The notes under the pieces were generated by a model. The model did not search any database. It worked only from the letters and a program-made list of their open reading frames with translations, and had not been told where the DNA came from. The translations under genes and the position numbers were made by a program. Shown in pieces: positions 1,581 to 24,949 of a DNA stretch of 64,000 nucleotides; the stretch's first letter is position 1, and the number at the start of each line of letters is the position of its first letter. Source of the stretch: Dendrobates tinctorius (Eukaryota); NCBI RefSeq assembly GCF_039654945.1, contig NW_027361704.1, forward strand, positions 13,516,001-13,580,000, in the 5' to 3' direction.

Positions 1581-3854
1581 TGTCGTTTTATTACGGCATA
1601 CGGAACCCCTATGGTTCATAAGCAATTTATCCAAAACCAAGCCTCTTACAAGATATTAAAAATAAATATGAATGCTTTTAATTTGCTGGGGATGAGGGAT
1701 GATCACAACTTCAGATGCCGCGAGATGAGGATTTTTGCGCATTTGGGGGACATTGGGGAAAAATTAAGAGATACGCACAGTCTAAATATACTGTTTTCAA
1801 CATTGAAATTTTAACACTAAAAAGGAAAAATAGTGGAATTATGAAAATCACAGCGTGTCTATTCAACTTATTAATATGCAAATGTTGAAAAAAATGTTCA
1901 AAATATCTAAAAAAAAATTTCAAAATTGAGTATAAGCACCACAAACAAAGACATGCATTTACACTTCATAGCATGTTATCAAAGAAGTTATTTATGGTTG
2001 CTTGAGGAAGGGATATTCTGCCATACTGAATGCACTGTACTTGGGCATGCAATTTACCAAGATCCGCTGCTGGCACCTCTCTTTGTAATTGCCGATCAAT
2101 GATGTTATAGATGTGCAAAAAGGGAGATAACTACAGAACTAAAACAGGCCATAATAGCGTGGGTAGGCATTGTTATATTGATAAACAGATTCAGGGACAC
2201 TTCCATGTTTCCTTTTGAATAGGGCCACCATCAGGGCATTACTGCCCTTACTGCTGTATGGGGCTTGATGAGCAGATGTAAAGAGGGGGTGGACCCAGTT
2301 CGGCCCCCCCCACCTGTGCTTATGCTCACCAGGCTCTAGGGTATTATAAAGTATCATGCTCAGTCGCAGGGAGTCTTCCTGGTGCAGCACAGCCATGAAA
2401 ACTGAATGGACTTGCAGCTCCAAGGGAGTCCGTTCACCTCTTCTGTGATGCACAGGTGACGACACGTACGCAATGACGCCGGCATGTACACGCACCACTA
2501 GGGTATAGAGTGGGGGACAGTGAATGATGTATTGATTTGGGTGAGCACAAATAATGATGATTTAGGGGGTAGTGACAGCAAATAATTAGTGTTGAGCATT
2601 CCGATACCGCAAGTATCGGGTATCGGCCGATATTAGCTGTATCGGAATTCCGATACTTAGTTCCGATACTTTTTTCATATCGAATACCGGAATCGGAAGT
2701 TCCCATAATGCTAGGAGCCCGCTCGATTTGATTCAGCCAATGGGGATCCTCAGAAGTGTGGGCATATCCTGTTAGGCATGTAGGCATGTTAACTACTGGC
2801 ATGGGTGTGATTGGCTGCTGAAATGATGTCATGATGCACTATAAAAAGCGCTGCAGCCACCATTTCTGGTCACTCTGCTGTGAATTCAGTTAGGGACAGG
2901 CTGCTGTTGAAGACTGTGAGGGACAGTTAGAAATAGCGATTCTAAAAACAATATTGTGCTTTATCCAGGCTACATAAACCACCACTGTAGCTTGCTTTTC
3001 CCTAGCAGCGCTGTTTTCACAGCTGTCTGCAAGGGTTGTGTGAGTGCAGACCCACGCTGTGTAGTGTGTCCTGCAGGCACGTCTGCTTGTAGGCCGGCCA
3101 GCGTGTGTCTCTGCCTCATACACATTTTTCTTTTATTGCTGCTTTTTTTTTCTCCTGTATAGTGTGCTTCCATACGTATCCATATAAGTTGGTTGCAAAC
3201 ACTAAAGGAGTGGACAGCGGAGCCTTTCAGCAGCCTTTCAGTGCTATAGCCTATTTCTCTGCACTGTTTTTGGCTGTCTGATAGGTCTCTCTGTGTGTGA
3301 GTGCAGCTCACGTTGCAGTGTGTTCTACAGCCACCGCTAGCTGTAGTCCACTCAGCGTGCGTCCCTGCCTCATACATAGTCCTTTTTTTGCAGCAAATTT
3401 AGCCAGATTTTTGCTCTTATATTAGTGTGCTTCCAACCGCATCCATTGTCATTGGTTGGTTGCAAACACTATATAGGATTAGATAGAGGAGCCTTTTTGC
3501 TGGCTTGTGCCCTTCAGGGCCAGCCAGGCTAGTATCACCCTATTTTTTGGAGCCTTATCAATTGCATCGTAGGTTAGCTTCCTGCATTGTAATCGCTCCA
3601 AAAAGTTTGTGATACTATAGCTTTCAAACTTTGGTCACATCCTTTCCTTTCCCCCCCACCCAAAAAAAAAAAGGAAATAAAGTTCACCAAACACTCCACT
3701 TTACAGTTGTCTAGGCCACATTAGATCATATTAAAGTGTAGAACACACACTCTTAGCCAAATTAGTGTTTCTTATACTGGTTAGCAGGTGTTCAGGAATA
3801 AGAACACTAAGCCACCCCTTTTTTACTTTTCTGCCTATCTATCAGTCTACCAAG

Positions 3855-6800
3855 ATGAAGAAGGCAGGGAGTAAGGCACGTGGTCGTGGCCGTGGAGTTT
3901 CAGCAGGGAGAGGACGGGGGGATTCAGCAGGGAGAGGACGTGGGGATTCGGTGTCTGCTGCGGCCACCAGTGACCCGGCATCCCCCACTTTTACCAGGCA
4001 ACAGTCCTTCATGCGCAGCTTTGTAGGACCTCGCCGTACCCCACTGCTGCGTGACGAACAAATTGAAGCCGTTGTCGGATGGATGGCAGCTAACGCATCC
4101 ACTTCAATGACTTCCGCATCCTCCCAAAGGCCAGAGCACTGAAGAGCAACCATCTGTCTCTTCACCACCTGCCAAATTGCCCAGGCAGTCTGAGAGCCCT
4201 GGACAGGAGCCATCTCAATCTTTACTTCTGTTCTCAGAATCTGTTGGCTTGGAAAGAGGTGGCCAGCCAAGCAGCATTCTAGAGCGTGAAGAAGAGGGAG
4301 TATGCAGTGATGCGCAACTGCTTTGTCCCTCTGAATCTGAAGAGGCGGGTGGGCCAGTGCCTATGGTCAGCACACCTCAGTATGCATCAGATGATGATGA
4401 GACTCAGTTGCCAATTTCTGGTGCGTACGGTGCTGGCGAGACAACCCAGGACCAGCCGGTGCTTGAAGAGGGGAGTGGAGATGATGAGGTCCTTGACCCA
4501 TCATGGCGTTAGCCACAGGAAGGTGGTGGGAGCAGCTCTGAGGAAGAGATTCCCCGAACGGCCAAAAGAGGAGGGAGAGGGCGGGGGCAGACTTGGTTGC
4601 CTGTAGCCTCCACTTTGGCACCCGTGAGGAGCAATCCTCTTCCAAAACACAAAACGGGCGCTCCCAGGACTTGCAGTGCGTGGTCTTTTTTTTGACACAG
4701 TTGCAGATGACATTTGCTTTGTCAAATGCAAGCTGTGTCATCAGAAAGTGAAACGAGGGAAAAATGTGACCAACCTCAATACCACAAATATGTGGAAACA
4801 TGTGCGTACCAAGCACGAGGTGAAGTTACACAGACACACTGAAGATGTAGGCCAACCTTCAGCAGCACCTACCACCTCTTCAGCTCGTGTTGGGGCCTCT
4901 TCCTCCAGCTCACACACAGCTGGTTCGGCTTCCTCACTGGAACGCCATGGAAGAACCACTGCCACTGTTGTCCAGAGACCCAGTGAAATTCCACCCACTG
5001 AACCACGTTCGCAGTCATCAGCACACTCCCAGGCCACTCACCAGCAATCGGTAGCACAGGCATGGGAGAAAAAGCGGCCATACTCGGCAAACCATCCCCG
5101 AGCACTGGCTCTGAATGCCGGCATTGCCAAACTACTGGCCCTTGAGATGCTGTCATTCAGGCTGGTGGAGACTGACACCTTCCGGAACTTTATGTCATTG
5201 GCAGTTCCACAATACAATGTGCCCAGCCGCTTTTATTTCAGCAGGCAAGCTGTCCCTGCCCTGCAAAAGCATGTGGAGGGAAAAATTAAAAATGCGCTAC
5301 TAAATGCCGTCAGTAGCAAGGTCCACCTGACCACCGATGCGTGGACCAGTAGCCATGGACAGGGACGATACCTTTCCCTCACTGCCCATTGGGTCAATGT
5401 TGTGGAGCCGGGTACAGATCTGGAGAGTGGCTCTGTACGTATTCTGCCAACTCCAAGGATTGCAGGAATGCAGTCTGTACATATTGAGTCCTCCTCCTAC
5501 TGGGCAAAACAGTCACTGAAAAAGACCTGGGGGTATGGGTGGACGACAAACTCACATTTAGTGGCCAGAGTCAAGCAGCTGCTGCAAAGGCAAATAAAAT
5601 AATGGGATGCATTAAAAGAGGCATAGATGCTCATGAGGAGAACATAATTTTACCTCTATATAAGTCACTAGTGCGACCACACTTAGAATACTGTGTACAG
5701 TTCTGGTCTCCGGTGTATAAGAAAGACATAGCTGAACTGGAGCGGGTGCAGAGAAGAGCGACCAAGGTTATTAGGGAACTAGGGGGTCTGCAATACCAAG
5801 ACAGGTTATTACACTTGGGGTTATTTAGTTTGGAGAATCGAAGGCTTAGGGGTGATCTTATTACAATGTATAAATATATGTGGGGACAATACAAAGACCT
5901 TTCTAATGATCTTTTTACTCTTAGACCTGTGACGGGGACAAGGGGGCATCCTCTACGTCTGGAGGAAAGAAGGTTTAAGCATACTCACAGATGCGGATTC
6001 TTTACTGTAAGAGCAGTGAGACTATGGAACTCTCTGCCATATGATGTTGTAATGAGTGATTCACTACTAAAATTTAAGAAGGGACTGGATGCCTTTCTTG
6101 AAAAGTATAATATTACAGGGTATATACACTAGTCTCCTTAATATTGCGTTGATCCAGGGAGCTAGTCTGATTGCCGTATGTGGAGTCGCGAAGGAATTTT
6201 TTTCCCCAATGTGAAGCTTACTGTTGCCACATGGGGTTTTTTGTCTTCCTCTGGATCAACATGTTAGGGCAAGTTAGGATAGGATATGGGTTGAACTAGA
6301 TGGACTTAAAGTCTCCCTTCAACCTTAATAACTATGTTACTATGTTACTATGTTACTCTAGTTCCTCGGAATCAGCACTGCGTGAGCCTGTTAGGCCAGA
6401 TATGAGCACAGGTGTGGCCAAACGTCAACAGGCCATCCTTAAATTAATTTCTTTGGGGAATCGGAGCCACACAGCACAGGAGCTCTGGAATGCCATCAAG
6501 CAGGAGAGTGATGTGTGGTTTGTGCCAGCGAATCTCCAGCCAGGTTTGGTAGTGAGTGACAATGGCCAAAATCTAGTGGCAGCTCTGGGCCTAGGCAACC
6601 TCACTCACATACCATGTCTGGCACACGTGCTCAATTTGGTCGTGCAGAGCTTTCTGAGGGACTATCCGGATCTTGATGCACTGCTGCACAAGGTTCGCCT
6701 AGAGTGTGCTCACTTGCGGCGTTCCAGCATGGCAAGATCGCGCATTGCATCTCTGCAACGCCGATTCCGCCTGCCAGAACATCGCATCATATGTGACCTC

Positions 6801-8051
6801 CCCACCAGGTGGAATTCAACGTTACATATGTTGGAGCGGTTGTGTGAGCAGCAGGCAGCAGTAATGGAGTACCAGCTGCATCAGGCGCAAACAAGTCGCA
6901 CTGTGCGCCGGACACACTTCACCACCACTGAGTGGGCCACTATGAGGGACATCTGCCAAGTTTTGCGTGCCTTCGATGACTCCACGCGGATGGCCAGTGC
7001 AGATGATGCACTAATCAGTATGACTGTCCCCCTCATCTGTCTGCTTCAAAAAACCTTACAAGCACTAAGTGAGGAGGTTTTTGAAGAGGTCGAGGATGAG
7101 CAGTCAGAAATGCCATCTGCTTCTGGCAAGTCTGCGCAACGTGCTTCCACACAAAGGCCCAGGCAGGGGACACTTAGTGAGGAGGATGACGAGGAGTCAA
7201 TGGAGGAGGAGGAACACATCTCTCCAGAGGAGGGAGGTACACAAGGCTCTAGTAGTCAGTGTGTACAGCGAGGGTGGGGTGATGCTGAGCAGGCAGAGAT
7301 GCTGCCTCAAGCTGGGGACAGCGTTTCCGGTCCAGTTGGCAGTCTGCAGCACATGGTTGACTTCATGCTGCAGTGCTTGTTAAATGACAGCCGCATCGCC
7401 AACATTCTCCACACGGCTGATTATTGGGTGTACACCCTCCTAGATCCTCGCTACCGGGACAACTTACAAAGCCTCATACCACAGTTGAACCAGGAGCGAA
7501 AAATGTGGGAGTACCAAGAAACACTTGTGCAGGCCATCATGTTCTCCATTCCCCCCACAAGTGTTGCTGGTAGTGCTTTTCAAAGCAGCCATGTGGGTAG
7601 AGGCAGTGGAGGAAGCTCTGCACAAAGAGGTAGCAGAGGCAGTGCCGCAGGACAAGGCAAGGCCAGTATGGCCCAAATGTGGAAAAGTTTTGTGGGACCG
7701 TCACAAACGGCTACAACATCACAGACGGCTCCAGTCAGCAGGAGGCAACGTTTCCGTCAGATGGTGACAGACTACTTGTCGTGCCCTGTTAGTGTTCTCC
7801 CAGACGGCTCTTCCCCGTTCAAGTATTGGGTCTCTAAGCTGGATACATGGCCAGAGCTTAGCCAGTATGCATTGGAGGTGCTGGCTTGCCCTGCTGCCAG
7901 TGTATTATCGGAACGTGTCTTTAGTGCTGCAGGTGGTGTGGTAACAGACCGTCGCACGCGACTATCCGCCGATAATGTTGACCGGCTTACTTTTGTGAAA
8001 ATGAACAAGGCCTGGATCTCACCTGAATTTGCCAGTCCTCTTCCAGAATAA
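3855..8051 (+). pseudogene. Disrupted hAT (ZBED/Ac-like) transposase
   Basis: RG-rich N-terminus MKKAGSKARGRGRG, BED finger (KCKLC...MWKHVRTKH), HLTTDAWTS, CLAHVLNL, PTRWNST, C-terminal PAASVLSERVFSAAG dimerisation motif. There are frameshifts or a stop at about 4140, 4510 and 4680, plus a CR1 insertion at 5501-6356. Confidence 0.93.
5498..6357 (+). mobile_element. 5'-truncated CR1 LINE inserted in the hAT-1 transposase
   Basis: ORF 5539-6132 has CR1 ORF2 C-terminal motifs ([33 protein letters not shown]). The 3' UTR ends in a (ctatgtta)n octamer tail, and tact is present at both junctions. Confidence 0.93.
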
Positions 8052-8084: not shown

Positions 8085-9790
8085 TTGTGTTCATGTTTCT
8101 ATGACCTGAACTTTATTTCCTGGGCTACAGCAACGCCCGTTGTTGCTCAGAAGTGCTGTCCGCACAGACAAAACACTCGCTCATGTGTAAGTGGGGTTCG
8201 GTAACGTCAGCTGATCCCCTGCTGTGTGTATGGCAAAGTGTCCTGCTCCCTCCACAGTCAAACAACCTCAGATTTACACCTGGCTCCAAGTAGGCCTCGG
8301 CCTACTACCTCATTTTCCCTGGGCTCCGACAATGCCAGTTGGTGCTCGGAAGTGCTGTCCGCACAGACAAAACACTCGTTTATGTGTAAGTGGGGTTCGG
8401 TAACGTCAGCTGATCCCCTGCTGTGTGTACGGCAAACTCTCCTGCTGCCTACAACTTCTGACTACCTCTGATTTAATATGTTCTCTGATTTGCCCTCTGT
8501 CTCCACTCTGTTTTGAGTATTTCCTCCGGCCTACAACACCGCCTGTTTCTGCTCTCAAGTGCCGTCTGCACAATCCACACTTGTTCCTGTGGTACCTGGG
8601 TCCTGTAACATCTGCTCATCTCCAGAGTTGAGCACGGCAATGTCTCCTGCTTTGTCTACATTCCCACTACTTGTAGTGGAAATGTGGACAGAGCAGGAGA
8701 CATTGCCTGACTCCCCTCTAGGGAGAAGCTGCTGTTACAGAACCCCAGTAACACAGGAACAAGTGTGGGTTGTGCAGATGGCATTTCAGAGCAGCAACTG
8801 GCGTGGTTGGAAGCCAGCGGAAATACTCGAAACAGAGTGAAGACAGAGGCCTAATTGGAGTATGTTGACAGTTAGTAGTAGTCTAGAAACAATCGCAAAC
8901 TGCCACCAAGTAGGCCTCGGCCTACTACCTGATTTTCCCTGGGCTCCAACACCGCCAGTTGGTGCTCAGAAGTGCTGTCCACACAGAAAAACACACTCGT
9001 TCATGTGAAAGTGGGGTTCGGTAACGTTAGCTGATCCCCTGCTGTGTGTATGGCAAAGTGTCCTGCTCCCTCCACAGTCAAACAACCTCAGATTTACACC
9101 TGGCTCCAAGTAGGCCTCGGCCTACTACCTCATTTTCCCTGGGCTCCCACAACGCCAGTTGGTGCTCCGAAGTGCTGTCCACACAGAAAAACACACTCGT
9201 TCATGTGAAAGTGGGGTTCAGTAACGTCAGCTTATCCCCTGCTGTGTGGAGGGCAAACTGCTGCTGCCTCCAAATTGTAATTACTTCAGATTTAAACATT
9301 CTCTGATTTGGCCTCTGTCTCCACTCTGTCTCTAGTATTTCCCCTGACCTCCAACACCGCCAGTTCCTGCTCACAGTTGCCGTCCACGCATTCCACACTT
9401 GTTCCTGTGTTCCTGGGGTTCTGTAACGTCAGCAGATCCCCCAATATGTGTCCGTCACTGTCTCCTGCGCTGTCCACCTTCCCACTGCAAGCGGTGGGAA
9501 TGTGGACAGAGCAGGAGACAGTGGCAGACACAAATCAGGGGATCTGCTGACATTACAGAATCCCAGTAACACAGCAACACGTGTGGATTGGGCAGACGGC
9601 TGCTGTACGCATAAACTGGCGGTGTTGGTGGTCACGTGAAATCCTGGAAACAGAGTGGAGACAGATGCCTAATTGGAGCACGTTGACAGTCTGTTGTAGC
9701 CTACAAACAATCTAAAACTACCACCAAGTAGGCCTCGGCCTACACCATGATTGTCCCTGGGCTCCAACAACACCAGTTGGTGCTCGGCAG
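8085..9790 (+). repeat. ~820-bp tandem duplication built from ~200-bp units, each copy containing a long inverted repeat
   Basis: gtaggcctcggcctac recurs at 8290, 8910, 9110 and 9728. Hairpin centres lie at 8671 and 9489. Confidence 0.85.
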
Positions 9791-10860
9791 TGTCTTTGGC
9801 ACGGGGACTCCCTGTTGCCCAGCCTAATTCCAGCACGCCTGCTGTTTCCGGGTAGTGTCAAGGTCACTATGCCACCAATCCGTTGTCCTGTCGTCTTGCG
9901 GCCGGGTTAGCCGACTCTACGGTGCCTGCAGTTTAGGTGACTCCTATGTGGGCTGCGGGAACTGGCACTGAAGGCTGGATCCGTAGTGCCAATGGGACAT
10001 GGACCCCCTGTAGGACTGTGGGTTTCGGTAACTGTGGCCGGCTTGCGGCCTGGCTACTTTGCTTTCAATGGGTACCTTCTGCTACCCACCCGGGTTCCAG
10101 CACTGTCTGCTGGTTCTCGCCAGAGCCTTTGGCCTAGGTGCCTCCATCTCGGTATCCGAGGTCCAGCACCGTCAGCTGGTCCTTGGTAGTGCTTTCTAGC
10201 ACAGGTACCTCCTGCCTAGTAACCGTGGTCAGAGCACAGTCAGCTGTTCCTCGGTAGTGCCATTGGCTCTTGTAGCTTTTGCTACCCATCTGGGTTCCAG
10301 CACCGTCAGCTGGTTCTCGGCAGTGTCTTTGGCATGGGGACTCCCTGTTGCCCAGCCTGGTTCCAGCACGCCTGCTGTTTCCGGGTAGTGTCAAGGTCAC
10401 TATGCCACCAATCCGTTGTCCTGTCGTCTTGCGGCCGGGTTAGCCGACTCTACGGTGCCTGCAGTTTAGGTGACTCCTATGTGGGCTGCGGGAACTGGCA
10501 CTGAAGGCTGGATCCGTAGTGCCAAATGGGACATGGACCCCCTGTAGGACTGTGGGTTTCGGTAACTGCGGCCGGCTTGCGGCCTGGCTACTTTGCTTTC
10601 AATGGGTACCTTCTGCTACCCACCCGGGTTCCAGCACTGTCTGCTGGTTCTCGCCAGAGCCTTTGGTCTAGGTGCCTCCATCTCGGTATCCGAGGTCCAG
10701 CACCGTCAGCTGGTCCTTGGTAGTGCTTTTTAGCACAGGTACCTTCTGCTTAGTAACCGTGGTCCAGCACCGTCAGTTGGTCCTCGGTAGTGCCATTGGC
10801 TCTTGTTCCTTCTGCTACCCATCCGGGTGCCAGCACTGTCTGCTGGTTCTCGCCAGTTTC
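9788..10860 (+). repeat. 533-bp tandem duplication with ~67-bp internal periodicity
   Basis: cagtgtctttggca at 9788 and 10321. The ccagcacygtcwgytgg motif recurs at 10097, 10163, 10297, 10631, 10697, 10764 and 10830. Confidence 0.9.
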
Positions 10861-11192
10861 TCAGCCTTCTTGTACCTTCTGCTACATTTCCAAGATCAAG
10901 CTTTTTGAAATTGTCTTTGGTAATCCTTATTGATCTCCAGGACGATGACCCTGATGATGACGACCCTGAAGACCACACCAAAGAAGACCAGAAATATGAC
11001 CCTAAATAATAAGACCAAGAGGACAAAGAAGATGAAGACAACCACCAAGATACAGAACAAAAGACAGAGGAACAAGAAGCAGAAGAAGCAAAAGCAGAAG
11101 AACAGAAAGCAGAAGAACATTAAGCATAAGACAAAAAATCAGCATAGAAAAAAAAATCAAAATTATAAGCAGAAGACAACTAAGCAGTAAAT

Positions 11193-11264
11193 GGGGGCGA
11201 GTCCGTTCCTCCTCGTGGTGCCCCTGGAAAATGCCTGCTGCTGCAGGCCAAACTGAACGCGGAC
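11193..11264 (+). ncRNA. Candidate HDV-like (delta) self-cleaving ribozyme
   Basis: P1 GGGGGCG/TGCCCCT with G1-U wobble, P2 GTCCGT/GCGGAC, P3 CC/GG, L3 TCCTCGT, GG for P1.1, P4 GCCTGC/GCAGGC, J4/2 CTGA (CNRA). P3 is one base pair short of canonical and J4/2 has 2 extra nt. Confidence 0.6.
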
Positions 11265-12394
11265 AAAACCTGTTGTAAATCTTTTGTGACAGGCAGAACG
11301 TAAGGTGTAATCTTATAACTTTTATAGATAAGTACTACAGGAATGCCTGTCACCATAAGAAAATGAAGAAAAAGAAGAATAGGAAGAAGATGAAGAAATA
11401 GCATATGAAAATTAATAATAGCTGAATAAGAAAAATATGAAGAATGGAAAAAAAAAATTAATGGGAAGAAGGTGAAGAAGAAGATGAATAAGGTGAAGAA
11501 AAAGTTGATGAAAAAAATGCTACTGCTGCGGATCATGAAGGAGAAAGTGTGGGAGAAGTACAAAAGAAGGTGAAGAGCATGGAAGTTGCGAAACATACAT
11601 ATCTGACTAAATATAAAAAAGTTAACATAGTCAATATCTTTTTAACTCCGAACGTCTTGAAAAAAAAAAATTGGAATTAATGCTATGCCATGTGATTTGA
11701 ATAAACCACTATGCTTTTAATGTCTCCTCCACCTCCCACAATACATTCTACATGATTCTTATTTGTTTTCAATTATGTAGAATTAGCCAACAAGGAAATA
11801 AAGGCCTTTTTTTAATTCCGATACCCGATATTTTTTTCGTGTCGGGCGATACCATCCGATACGATATTTTTGGGTATCTTACGGTATCGCTCAACACTAC
11901 AAATAATTAATTGAGTGGGGAGACAAAAGACAGCAAATGATGAATTGAAGTTGGGAGAGCAAATGATGATGAATAGAGGGTGGGAGGGAGAGAGAACATA
12001 ACATAATGAACTGGAGCGTAGGGAGGCATGTAAATATAATGAATGGGGGAGCAGGAGGTACAGAGTGGGGGGGTGTTGAAGATGCAGGAGTATGACTGAA
12101 TTTATTAGGGAAAGAATAGAGGTGCTAATTAATTTATATATTTATTGGGTGGGGAAAGTGGCCATTTATAATTTGTTTGGGGCACAATGGTGGATTACAA
12201 CTTAAATTTGCAATGCTGGGTTGAATAATAACTAATTAGATATTAATGATGGGTAAAAGTTAGGGAAAATCTTGGGAATGTGCTCTGGAAGTGGTGCTCT
12301 AGATAACTGTAATTTTAGGCAGAGATGAGTTCTGGCTGGAAGAAGTGATGGTGGTCTGCGCTGGATGCATGAATGACTTCAACTACAGATGTAA

Positions 12395-13187
12395 GGCTGG
12401 TTTCACACTTGCGTTTTTTTTGTGCTAAATAGCGCATGCGTTTTTTTTTCCTATACTTTGCATGGGATGCGCTTATGTGCGCATACACATGCGTTTGTAC
12501 GCGTTTTTCCGCGCATGCGTTTTTTTGCGTTATGCGCTCGGGCGCACAAAATGCAACCTGTCGCATTTTTGGGGCATCCGACTTGCCTCAAAAAAACGCA
12601 TGCGCGCGCAATGTGTTTTTTTACAGCAAGACACCCATTATAAGTCTATGGTGAGCATATGTGCGCATTGGCATGCTTATGTATGCTTTTTTTGCACATG
12701 CGTTTTTTTTTTACCATTAGTAAGACAATGGAATTTAGGGGTTTGGGTTAGAGTTAGGGNNNNNNNNNNNNNNNNNNNNNNNNNNNNNNNNNNNNNNNNN
12801 NNNNNNNNNNNNNNNNNNNNNNNNNNNNNNNNNNNNNNNNNNNNNNNNNNNNNNNNNNNNNNNNNNNNNNNNNNNNNNNNNNNNNNNNNNNNNNNNNNNN
12901 NNNNNGGGTTAGGGTTAGGATCAGGGTATGGTTTGGTTAAGGGTTAGGGTTAGGGTCAGGGTTAGTAAAGTCATGGTTTGGGTTAGTGTGAGGGGCCACC
13001 TGTTTGGAAAAACCGCAAACGCGGTAAAAACGCACTAAAAACGCATACAAACGCATAAAAACGCTGCGTATTTTTCATGCATGCTCATAAAAATGCTTGA
13101 AAAAAAATGCAGCAGTTGTATGCGTTTTTTCAATGCTTTTTTTGCGGGAAAAACGCGCTGCAAAAAAAAGCAAGTGTGAAACTAGCC
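12395..13187 (+). mobile_element. Harbinger-type MITE with internal telomere-like (TTAGGG) repeats; contains the assembly gap 12760-12905
   Basis: TIR ggctggtttcacacttgc / gcaagtgtgaaactagcc, TAA/TTA flanks. A reverse-oriented sibling lies at 57836-58549. Confidence 0.88.
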
Positions 13188-13399
13188 TTACTGGTTAGTC
13201 AGTGTCTTACCTGTACACTGACACTATACACTGCTTAGTACATACAGAGCTCCTGTGTATAATATCACCGGTGATCCCTGTATTACCTGTATACTGACAC
13301 TATATATTAAATACTATGTACAAAGCTCCTGTGTATATTGGTAATTTTGGTAATATTAGTATTGTGGGTTTTTTTTTTTTATTAACGATCCGAATTGTA

Positions 13400-24383: not shown

Positions 24384-24492
24384 GCGGCGTTATTCCCACG
24401 AGTCACGACCCTCCAAACAGCGTTCATGAAGGCAAAGTGTTTGTTTTACGTGGGCAGTATGGTTGCAAAGCTGAACCTTAAAGGAATGTCCA

Positions 24493-24523
<31 letters not shown>

Positions 24524-24847
24524 ATAATTTGACTCAACATGGGCAACCTCAACCATCCAGCCACAAAAAAGATGCACACATTGCAAGCTTAATTCCGTTA
24601 ACGAACGAGACTCCGTCATGCCCCGCGGTCCGAGTCCGGCTTACTAGAGGGACACGCGAGGCTCTGGCACGTGAGATTGGCCAATAACTGGTGTGTCATG
24701 CCATTACATGTCCGTGGCTGCATGTGCGCTACACTGAAAAGGCCAGCGTTTGTCGCTTACAGGTGCAGATAACCCGCTGAACAACGTTAGTGATGGGGAT
24801 CTGGGATTACAATTACTACCCGCGAACGATGATTTCCCACTAAGTGC
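24384..24847 (+). pseudogene. Degenerate 18S rRNA fragment inside hAT-2
   Basis: Recognisable 18S blocks in order: gtatggttgcaaagctgaa, gaagggcaccaccaggagtggagcct, taatttgactcaaca, ttaattccgttaacgaacgagactc, tagagggaca, gcgctacactga, gtgatggggatc, ttcccactaagtgc. There are many substitutions and an internal deletion of roughly 60 nt. Confidence 0.9.
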
Positions 24848-24949
24848 AGTTCCAGAATTAGGCCTAACCGTCATTGCTGAAAAAAAATGAAAAACTTACG
24901 TGTGCAAACCACAGGTGCTGTAGCTTGCTTAACAGCTCGCCAGCCGTTC

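What the first reader, a model, noticed from the sequence alone, without database searches (positions are those of the whole stretch)
11193..11264. HDV-like ribozyme fold inside a cut-and-paste hAT DNA transposon
Seen in sequence: P1 GGGGGCG (11193-99)/TGCCCCT (11219-25) with a G1-U wobble, P2 GTCCGT/GCGGAC, L3 TCCTCGT, GG at 11226-27 for P1.1, P4 GCCTGC-TGCT-GCAGGC, and J4/2 C11253-TGA. It lies within the TIRs, on the transposase-sense strand, as a GC-rich island between purine-rich low-complexity tracts. Established: this is the nested double-pseudoknot layout of HDV/CPEB3/R2 ribozymes, which among mobile elements are known mainly from retrotransposons. Inference: cleavage 5' of G11193 could end read-through transcripts of the element or release the structured RNAs upstream. 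Caveats: P3 has only 2 clear base pairs (or P1 has 6), and there are 2 extra nt before P2'. It is antisense to the DOCK2-like pre-mRNA.
Basis: partly seen in the sequence, partly recalled or inferred. Interest (0 to 1): 0.85.

Follow-up and report, generated by a model that had tools for sequence, protein, structure and literature searches.

The report
HDV-type ribozyme module in frog hAT transposon
A cut-and-paste (hAT) jumping gene of poison frogs carries, in every copy I could fetch from three species, a 72-base stretch with the catalytic-core sequence and helix layout of hepatitis-delta/R2-type self-cutting RNAs. That would be a first for a DNA transposon, but cutting is untested and two core details are off.

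Summary
In detail: every stated pairing sits at 11193-11264, inside a 9.3-kb hAT element (TIRs at 2587 and 11899, 8-bp duplication CAAATAAT), on the transposase strand.

The fold alone is not beyond chance. A descriptor loosened to admit it gives 0.45 hits per shuffled window, a strict one rejects it, and Rfam finds nothing.

Two things lift it above chance:
- It shares 13 consecutive bases (CCTCCTCGTGGTG: P3, L3, P3') with the published conserved catalytic region of Drosophila R2 ribozymes and with mosquito drz-Agam-1-3.
- I fetched three more complete or partial copies of the same hAT family (Ranitomeya imitator, and two from R. variabilis with their own duplications). All carry the motif about 700 bp from the 3' end. 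Its core varies at 1 of 47 columns against 27 of 128 in the flanks. All five changes fall in a P1 wobble, a linker or the ends of P4.

Weaknesses:
- There is no compensatory change.
- P3 has a U-U where relatives have A-U or G-U.
- J4/2 is 1-2 nt longer than in HDV or drz-Agam-1-3.
- There is no RNA-end evidence.

Verdict: probably a genuine HDV-like module, perhaps retroelement-derived, with activity unproven. The scan had already flagged this motif on other DNA of this genome (s1-376871, s1-376835).

The parts
2579..2586 (.). 8-bp target-site duplication CAAATAAT, left copy
   Evidence: the same 8 bases follow the 3' TIR at 11900-11907.
2587..2597 (+). hAT 5' terminal inverted repeat TAGTGTTGAGC, followed by CGATAC-type subterminal repeats
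   Evidence: The same TIR starts the copies in L001, L010 and L011.
3765..5500 (+). N-terminal part of the transposase (BED-finger region), in frame-shifted pieces
   Evidence: ORFs. It aligns at 82-88% nucleotide identity with the annotated ZBED4-like genes of R. variabilis and with the R. imitator copy.
5500..6380 (+). Nested CR1-like LINE fragment (C-terminal end of the reverse transcriptase) that splits the transposase gene; this hAT copy is dead
   Evidence: The segment is absent from the homologous copies: L001 11602 runs straight on to 11669, and L010 and L011 show the same join.
6300..8051 (+). C-terminal transposase ORF (583 aa) with the hAT dimerisation domain
   Evidence: The best relatives are ZBED4/6-like hAT proteins of dendrobatid frogs with PF05699 and PF27039.
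8100..10860 (+). Hairpin and tandem-repeat arrays behind the transposase
   Evidence: families D2-D10, inverted repeats I1-I3. The same arrays are present in L001, L006, L010 and L011.
10930..11190 (+). Purine-rich low-complexity tract upstream of the motif; it ends with the A-rich run and ...GCAGTAAAT
   Evidence: It is poorly conserved between copies.
11193..11198 (+). P1 5' strand. The predicted cleavage site is 5' of G11193. Base 11198 is C here and T in the other three copies and in almost all laid contigs.
11201..11206 (+). P2 5' strand GUCCGU
   Evidence: invariant in 4 copies.
11207..11219 (+). P3-L3-P3': U-CC-UCCUCGU-GG-U. The 12-mer CCTCCTCGTGGT equals the conserved catalytic region of R2 ribozymes. 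C11211 and C11212 are the P1.1 partners.
11220..11227 (+). P1 3' strand GCCCCU (11220-25) and the P1.1 GG (11226-27)
   Evidence: invariant in 4 copies.
11228..11248 (+). Linker AAAAU and the P4 hairpin GCCUGC-UGCU-GCAGGC. This is the only variable part of the motif (11229, 11232, 11233, 11238).
11249..11258 (+). J4/2 CAAACUGAAC, with the proposed catalytic C11253
   Evidence: invariant in 4 copies. The spacing to P2' is 1-2 nt longer than in HDV or drz-Agam-1-3.
11259..11264 (+). P2 3' strand GCGGAC
11286..11354 (+). Hairpin with a 10-bp stem (GTGACAGGCA / TGCCTGTCAC), the rest of the roughly 160-bp GC-richer block
   Evidence: Two stem pairs are broken, without compensation, in the R. imitator copy.
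11355..11670 (+). Second purine-rich tract, ending in an A11 run
11889..11899 (-). hAT 3' terminal inverted repeat (GCTCAACACTA on the + strand)
   Evidence: Contig depth drops here.
11900..11907 (.). 8-bp target-site duplication CAAATAAT, right copy

Best explanation
The 72 bases are a genuine HDV-like ribozyme module of the R2/drz-Agam-1 core type. The module is a fixed part of a poison-frog hAT DNA-transposon family and moves with it by cut-and-paste.

In sense-strand transcripts of the element it would fold into the nested double pseudoknot:
- P1 of 6 bp, starting at G11193.
- J1/2 of GA.
- P2 of 6 bp.
- P3 of U-U plus two G-C pairs.
- L3 UCCUCGU.
- P1.1 of CC with GG.
- P4 hairpin.
- J4/2 with C11253 as the general acid.

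It would cut between U11192 and G11193. That would sever the transposase and hairpin-array RNA, which would end in an A-rich tract with a cyclic phosphate, from the last 700 nt of the element.

Shown: the sequence, the core identity to known ribozymes, membership of the hAT family, and preferential conservation of the core. Inferred: folding, cleavage, its rate and any benefit to the element. The module most likely came from the 5' end of a retroelement that the hAT ancestor captured or was hit by, but that origin is not shown.
For: Layout and core sequence:
- All helices are present at the stated coordinates. P1, P3 and P4 are part of the minimum-energy fold in a 180-nt context.
- It also matches drz-Agam-1-3 (...ACCUCCUCGUGGUgucagccGG..., preprint 10.64898/2026.10.01.755752).
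- The exact 12-mer occurs once in the window, against 0.28 expected with up to 1 mismatch. In 340 kb of other frog DNA it occurs only in copies of this hAT family.

Family membership:
- Copies L006 (R. imitator), L010 and L011 (R. variabilis) carry the motif in the same place.
- L010 and L011 have their own TIRs and their own 8-bp duplications, CTGATTAC and ATTACAAC.

Conservation:
- There are 5 variable columns in the 72. They are a C-G to U-G change in P1, two linker bases and the two end pairs of P4.
- P2, P3, L3, P1.1 and J4/2 are invariant.
- The core varies at 1 of 47 columns against 27 of 128 in the flanks, Fisher p = 0.002.
- Positions 11191-11220 are the least variable 30 columns of the 3' kilobase.
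- 4 of 5 CpGs in the motif are shared with L006, against 3 of 22 outside.
- In contigs of small runs, word depth over 11196-11320 is 10-100 times that of the rest. This fits the motif being the best-kept part across very many copies, though the tool warns that depth is a poor measure.
Against: - No pair shows a change on both sides. The covariation score equals that of the shuffles, and there are only 3 distinct sequences.
- No Rfam HDV-like family matches, even at E up to 10 on 87 nt.
- My strict descriptor rejects the site.
- P3 has only two Watson-Crick pairs. P3 of HDV and CPEB3 is 'highly sensitive to individual mutations' (PMC9901934).
- J4/2 is CUGAAC, against CGAAU in HDV and CCAAC in drz-Agam-1-3 (my own parsing).
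- If P1 has 7 bp, J1/2 is a single nucleotide. That gave little activity in drz-Agam-2-1 (PMC4908430).
- A contig of a possibly-RNA run crosses the site (X15 record 14, 11163-11397).
- The NCBI gene range for P0059 runs to within 1 nt of the hAT 3' end in L011. Both points hint at uncut read-through RNA, if they reflect RNA at all.
- Conservation could serve a DNA-level function instead.
Confidence: 0.45

Rival explanations
1. It is a dead relic. The motif descends from a real retroelement HDV-like ribozyme that was captured by, or inserted into, the hAT ancestor. The U-U in P3 and the longer J4/2 have inactivated it, and it now rides along as passenger DNA.
For: - The core is identical to R2 and drz-Agam-1-3, yet has two deviations at the most sensitive junction.
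- Both deviations are shared by all four copies, so they predate the family's spread.
- hAT elements of this genome carry other captured pieces, such as an 18S fragment at 24452-24883.
- No function for a ribozyme in a DNA transposon is known.
Against: - A passenger should decay like its flanks. Instead the core varies at 1 of 47 columns against 27 of 128, and keeps 4 of 5 CpGs against 3 of 22.
- The variation that does occur falls where HDV-like ribozymes tolerate it: the ends of P4, a linker and a wobble.
- No retroelement boundaries, target duplication or free-standing copy was found.
Confidence: 0.3
2. It is a chance look-alike. The block is conserved for another reason, such as transposase or host-factor binding, a promoter or terminator, or DNA hairpins, and only happens to be drawable as an HDV fold.
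For: - Fold-only hits are common: 0.45 per shuffled window, and 2 spurious loci in 340 kb of frog DNA.
- The free energy is ordinary.
- There is no Rfam hit and no covariation.
- The motif lies in a roughly 160-bp block with palindromes and a second hairpin that folds equally on both strands.
Against: - My rough estimate, not a simulation: the exact 12-13-mer of the R2/drz-Agam catalytic core, set in the right frame of P1, P1.1, P2 and P4, is expected about 1e-6 times per 64-kb window.
- Conservation starts within 2 nt of the predicted cleavage site and breaks 3 nt after P2', where the R. variabilis copies have a 6-nt deletion.
- The neighbouring hairpin is not protected: two pairs are broken in L006.
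Confidence: 0.15
3. It is a nested, still separate non-autonomous retroelement. On this reading, 11193 to about 11670 (ending in A11) is a SIDE- or retrozyme-like unit headed by its own ribozyme. Such a unit would also exist free-standing at high copy number, and the hAT would merely contain one copy.
For: - Contig word depth in ten small runs rises about 60-fold at 11196 and falls in steps near 11406 and 11616-11658.
- An A11 run lies at 11660-70.
- Earlier notes of the scan report roughly 400-nt HDV-ribozyme repeats in this genome (unchecked).
Against: - All four hAT copies from three species have the same junctions on both sides.
- No target duplication flanks the unit.
- No free-standing copy was found in the window or in 340 kb of dendrobatid DNA.
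- The depth pattern is also explained by the motif being the best-conserved stretch, and the tool warns against reading depth.
Confidence: 0.08

Closest known systems
R2 retrotransposon 5' ribozymes (Drosophila; HDV-like)
   Same: - Identical P3'-L3 core CC-UCCUCGU-GGU-R (PMC3414825).
- G at +1.
- A two-G P1.1 partner right after P1'.
- The same nested double-pseudoknot order.
- Carried by a mobile element on its sense strand.
   Different: - R2 ribozymes sit at the very 5' end of a non-LTR retrotransposon RNA and define that end. Here the motif lies 8.6 kb into, and 700 bp before the end of, a cut-and-paste hAT element.
- The outer P3 pair is U-U rather than A-U or G-U.
- No rRNA sequence lies upstream.
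drz-Agam-1-3 (Anopheles gambiae HDV-like ribozyme)
   Same: By my own parsing of the sequence printed in preprint 10.64898/2026.10.01.755752:
- The 13-nt core and the GG for P1.1 are the same.
- Both have a short A-rich linker before P4.
- In both, J4/2 ends in AAC directly before P2'.
   Different: - J4/2 is ...CCAAC in drz-Agam-1-3 and ...CUGAAC here, one nucleotide more after the candidate catalytic C.
- P1 is 7 bp with G-C first there, and 6 bp with G-U first here.
- The Rfam model of that family does not match the frog sequence.
Genomic HDV ribozyme and mammalian CPEB3 ribozyme
   Same: - G1-U wobble at the cleavage site, and U at -1.
- L3 starts UCCUCG as in genomic HDV.
- L3 is 7 nt and P1 begins GGGGGC..GCCCCU, as I recall for CPEB3 (from memory).
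- The catalytic C lies in J4/2.
   Different: - HDV has CGAAU in J4/2 and, from my own knowledge, so does CPEB3. Both have 3 Watson-Crick pairs in P3 (PMC9901934).
- HDV sits in a viral circular RNA and CPEB3 in a host intron, neither in a DNA transposon.
Other HDV-like folds reported by this scan in roughly 400-nt frog repeats (for example s1-386030, s1-362216)
   Same: Same genome, same ribozyme class, and also carried by mobile repeats.
   Different: According to those unchecked notes, the other folds have a different core: C1-G37, an inverted P1.1 and L3 UUGNCGU. They head non-coding retro-repeats. No sequence similarity to my stretch was returned.

Membership tests
HDV-like self-cleaving ribozymes | Nested double-pseudoknot order P1-P2-P3-L3-P3'-P1'-P1.1-P4-J4/2-P2' | tested here: met
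   (relaxed descriptor hit at 11193 +); 97% of pair cells are standard pairs in 4 copies.
HDV-like self-cleaving ribozymes | P1 of 6-7 bp beginning at the cleavage site (PMC4908430) | tested here: met
   G11193-U11225 through C/U11198-G11220 gives 6 bp, and a seventh G-U pair is possible.
HDV-like self-cleaving ribozymes | P3 of 3 base pairs (PMC3185411, PMC9901934) | tested here: not met
   Only C11208-G11218 and C11209-G11217 pair. The third position is U11207 opposite U11219 in all four copies.
HDV-like self-cleaving ribozymes | P1.1 of 1-2 pairs between L3 and the bases after P1' | tested here: met
   C11211-G11227 and C11212-G11226, invariant.
HDV-like self-cleaving ribozymes | Catalytic cytosine in J4/2 at the usual distance from P2' (C-N-R-A, then P2') | tested here: inconclusive
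   C11253-U-G-A is present, but 2 more nt (AC) precede P2'. HDV has CGAAU and drz-Agam-1-3 has CCAAC, so the spacing here is 1-2 nt longer. The strict descriptor fails on this point.
HDV-like self-cleaving ribozymes | Conserved core sequence of the R2/drz-Agam-1/HDV group (CC-UCCUCG-..-GG) | tested here: met
   The exact CCTCCTCGTGGTG is present.
HDV-like self-cleaving ribozymes | Match to a curated covariance model (Rfam HDV, CPEB3, drz-Agam and similar families) | tested here: not met
   No such family appears at gathering score on the whole window, nor at E up to 10 on 251 nt or on 87 nt. These models are narrow, so this is weak evidence.
HDV-like self-cleaving ribozymes | Pairings supported by compensatory changes | tested here: inconclusive
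   0 pairs change on both sides, and 1 pair changes C-G to U-G. There are only 3 distinct sequences.
HDV-like self-cleaving ribozymes | Site-specific self-scission giving 5'-OH and 2',3'-cyclic phosphate ends | not testable with these tools
   Only assembled contigs were available, with no raw read ends (table 6: none).
hAT superfamily DNA transposons (the carrier) | Short TIRs, 8-bp target-site duplication, and a transposase with BED finger and hAT dimerisation domain | tested here: met
   TIR and duplication in the window and in L010 and L011. The transposase relatives carry PF02892, PF27039 and PF05699.
Ribozyme-headed non-LTR retroelements (R2, SIDEs, retrozyme-like repeats) | Ribozyme at the 5' boundary of a retro-inserted unit with its own 3' tail and target duplication | tested here: not met
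   The same flanks occur in all four hAT copies, there is no duplication around 11193-11670, and no free-standing copy was found. The contig depth steps remain unexplained.

The most novel reading that the evidence does not exclude
A cut-and-paste DNA transposon family keeps an active HDV-like ribozyme under selection and uses it to process its own sense transcript, for example by making a poly(A)-independent 3' end after the A-rich tract at 11150-11192. This would be the first self-cleaving ribozyme shown to be a working part of a DNA transposon. Its core would tolerate a U-U pair in P3 and a lengthened J4/2.
Probability: 0.3. Interest if true: 0.85.

Novelty: new variant of a known kind. Interest (0 to 1): 0.6.

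Why it matters
Among mobile elements, HDV-like ribozymes are known from retrotransposons, where they cut the element's RNA out of a co-transcript. A full-text search found no report of one in a DNA transposon.

If this module cuts, it shows that ribozymes can be recruited by cut-and-paste elements, which need no RNA intermediate. It would also provide a natural test of how much change the P3/J4/2 core tolerates.

If it does not cut, it is still a dated molecular fossil. It would show a retroelement ribozyme carried through at least three poison-frog species by a hAT family.

Tried and rejected
Searches that found nothing:
- Rfam at gathering and at permissive E-values: no HDV-like match.
- Other copies inside the window by BLAST: none.
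- Predicted proteins overlapping the motif, to reach other copies: the minus-strand 138-aa ORF and an 86-aa array ORF found nothing.
- The exhaustive representative search with the 103-aa ORF gave only P0055, which by luck led to the R. imitator copy.
- Metagenome scan for a 23-mer of the motif: 0 matches.
- Scan notes by sequence and by relatives: blank.

Loci without the motif:
- hAT loci of Dendrobates tinctorius and Phyllobates terribilis, and three other R. imitator loci. These are different hAT families.
- L001 (R. variabilis), which ends before the 3' part.
- P0058, which returned no DNA because the gene range was too long.

Ideas considered and dropped:
- The block as a small intron between purine-rich exons, or the purine-rich tracts as coding sequence. 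Frames are not kept between copies.
- Alternative P2 register CGUUC/GAACG (11204-08 with 11255-59). It is possible on paper, but it destroys P3.
- Reading contig depth as RNA abundance with a 5' end at 11193. Rejected because the runs' type is unknown and the tool says depth cannot be used that way.

Full report
**What is there.**
- P1: GGGGGCG 11193-99 with TGCCCCT 11219-25.
- P2: GTCCGT 11201-06 with GCGGAC 11259-64.
- P3 and L3: CC 11208-09 and GG 11217-18 around L3 TCCTCGT.
- P1.1: GG 11226-27 opposite C11211 and C11212.
- P4: GCCTGC-TGCT-GCAGGC, 11233-48.
- J4/2: C11253-TGA, followed by AC, before P2'.

**The carrier.** The motif sits in a 9.3-kb hAT element.
- The TIR TAGTGTTGAGC is at 2587 and its reverse complement ends at 11899. 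A perfect 8-bp duplication, CAAATAAT, lies on both sides.
- The transposase is on the + strand.
- It is split by a nested CR1-like LINE piece at 5500-6380 that homologous copies lack. This copy is therefore dead.
- Behind the transposase come about 2.7 kb of hairpin and tandem arrays, then a purine-rich tract, then a roughly 160-bp GC-richer block that opens with the motif. After that come a second purine-rich tract and the subterminal repeats.

**Is the fold more than chance?** Not on its own.
- The 72-mer's free energy is ordinary (z = -0.2).
- Rfam reports no HDV-like family at gathering score, nor at E up to 10 on 251 nt or 87 nt.
- I wrote an HDV descriptor. The strict form requires P1 of 7 bp, P3 of 3 bp, and C-N-R-A adjacent to P2'. 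It has no hit in the window.
- A form relaxed just enough to admit the candidate allows P3 of 2 bp, one spacer nucleotide, and up to 2 extra nt before P2'. It hits only 11193 +.
- That relaxed form gives a mean of 0.45 hits per dinucleotide-shuffled window, and 106 of 300 shuffles have at least one.
- It also gives two spurious low-complexity loci in 340 kb of other frog DNA.

**What lifts it above chance: the core sequence.**
- It is also identical to the corresponding part of the mosquito ribozyme drz-Agam-1-3, as printed in preprint 10.64898/2026.10.01.755752.
- Genomic HDV has the close CCTCCTCGCTGG.
- The 12-mer occurs once in the window, against 0.28 expected with up to one mismatch. In the fetched frog loci it occurs only in copies of this hAT family.
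- By my rough estimate, not a simulation, this core in the right frame of P1, P1.1, P2 and P4 is expected about 1e-6 times per window.

**The layout read by homology to those ribozymes (my own parsing).**
- P1 is 6 bp (G11193-U11225 to C11198-G11220).
- J1/2 is GA.
- P2 is 6 bp.
- P3 is U11207-U11219 plus two G-C pairs. R2 and drz-Agam-1-3 have A-U or G-U at the first position.
- L3 (UCCUCGU) and P1.1 are the same as in those ribozymes.
- J4/2 ends CUGAAC, against CCAAC in drz-Agam-1-3 and CGAAU in HDV.

The two flaws are therefore one non-canonical pair in P3 and a J4/2 that is 1-2 nt too long.

**Related copies.** Protein look-ups led to other copies of the same hAT family.
- L006 is from Ranitomeya imitator. 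I reached it through a GPCR gene model whose first exon is a hAT hairpin unit.
- L010 and L011 are from R. variabilis. I reached them through the 90% cluster of the closest transposase.
- L010 and L011 are complete elements with the same TIRs and their own 8-bp duplications, CTGATTAC and ATTACAAC.
- All three carry the motif at the same place, so it moves with the hAT.

**Variation within the motif.** In the four-way alignment (A1) the 72-nt motif has five variable columns.
- 11198 is C here and T elsewhere, which changes a C-G pair to U-G.
- 11229 and 11232 lie in the linker before P4.
- 11233 and 11238 are the outer and the loop-closing pairs of P4.
- P2, P3, L3, P1.1, J4/2 and P2' are invariant.

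**Conservation against the flanks.**
- The core varies at 1 of 47 columns and the P4/linker part at 4 of 25. The flanks (11150-92 and 11265-11350) vary at 27 of 128.
- Fisher p is 0.002 for core against flanks.
- Positions 11191-11220 are the least variable 30 columns of the whole 3' kilobase.
- Conservation begins within 2 nt of the predicted cut. It breaks 3 nt after P2', where the R. variabilis copies have a 6-nt deletion.
- Four of five CpGs in the motif are shared with L006, against 3 of 22 outside. By my hand calculation the hypergeometric p is about 0.009.
- This pattern is what a ribozyme with a dispensable P4 predicts (PMC9901934). It rests on three distinct sequences that are not independent, and no pair shows a compensatory double change.

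**Reads.** Only assembled contigs could be laid.
- The stretch 10860-11909 is highly repeated, and the signal stops at the hAT end.
- Almost all contigs read T at 11198, and 11232 is polymorphic. These are the same sites that vary between species.
- Contigs from two organisms cross from the upstream tract into the motif (X5 records 27 and 28, X15 record 14, X17 records 18 and 19).
- In ten small runs, about half of the sampled words are held. In the one of them that I laid (X5), word depth over 11196-11320 is 10-100 times that of the rest.
- I read this as the motif being the best-kept stretch in very many copies. The tool warns that contig depth cannot rank parts, so this is only a hint.
- No start or end pile-ups can be seen in contigs, so cleavage in vivo is untested.

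**Points against an efficient ribozyme.**
- P3 of HDV and CPEB3 is highly sensitive to single mutations.
- A one-nucleotide J1/2 gave little activity in drz-Agam-2-1 (PMC4908430). This applies only if P1 has 7 bp.
- A contig from a possibly-RNA run spans the site.
- An NCBI gene range in L011 runs to within 1 nt of the hAT end.

**Verdict.**
- The motif is very probably related to real HDV-like ribozymes; I put this at about 0.8.
- It is a conserved part of a hAT family in at least three poison-frog species.
- Whether it still cuts is open. I give 0.45 to an active, selected module, 0.30 to an inactive relic, 0.15 to a look-alike in a block conserved for another reason, and under 0.1 to a separate nested retroelement.
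- A full-text search found no report of an HDV-like ribozyme in a DNA transposon.
- The scan had already flagged the same motif on other pieces of this genome (s1-376871, s1-376835).

Noticed in passing
window 24452-24883 (+): Partial eukaryotic 18S rRNA match (Rfam SSU_rRNA_eukarya, 108.9 bits, model positions 1118-1666).
   Followed up: no
window 5500-6380: A CR1-like LINE fragment (C-terminal end of the reverse transcriptase, ORF 5539-6132) is inserted into the hAT transposase gene. It is absent at the same point in the Ranitomeya copies L001, L010 and L011.
   Followed up: partly
window 12739-12995, around the N run 12760-12905: Degenerate TTAGGG-like (telomere-type) repeats flank the masked or gap stretch (repeat finder family D11).
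   Followed up: no
window 12391-12420 and 13162-13191: A 30-nt inverted repeat, 93% complementary (GTAAGGCTGGTTTCACACTTGCG...), encloses about 740 bp rich in GCGCATGCGTTTTTTT palindromes. It looks like a small MITE-type element just outside the hAT.
   Followed up: no
window 11286-11354: A hairpin with a 10-bp stem lies directly behind the motif. It folds equally on both strands (z about -1.7). Two stem pairs are broken, without compensation, in the R. imitator copy.
   Followed up: partly
L006 9450-9821 (-), homologous to window 10900-11130: In the Ranitomeya copies the upstream purine-rich tract is a (GACGACCCTGGAGAC)-type repeat. It reads as a 123-aa ORF rich in Asp, Pro and Glu and ends ...EQKVEEH*. 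The frame is broken in the window copy, so this is probably not a gene.
   Followed up: partly
L006 10001-10249; L010 and L011 gene ranges: Public gene models absorb pieces of this hAT. A R. imitator GPCR model (P0055) takes its first roughly 45 residues from a hAT hairpin unit. R. variabilis models LOC143773505 and LOC143817291 start in the transposase, and the second ends within 1 nt of the hAT 3' TIR.
   Followed up: partly
window 10860-11700, runs X5-X14: Ten small public runs from three studies (coded P2-P4; 8-76 million letters) each hold about half of the sampled words of this stretch. In X5 the depth steps up about 60-fold at 11196 and down near 11406 and 11616-11658. The run types are unknown, so this is unexplained beyond 'the best-conserved part of a very abundant repeat'.
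   Followed up: partly
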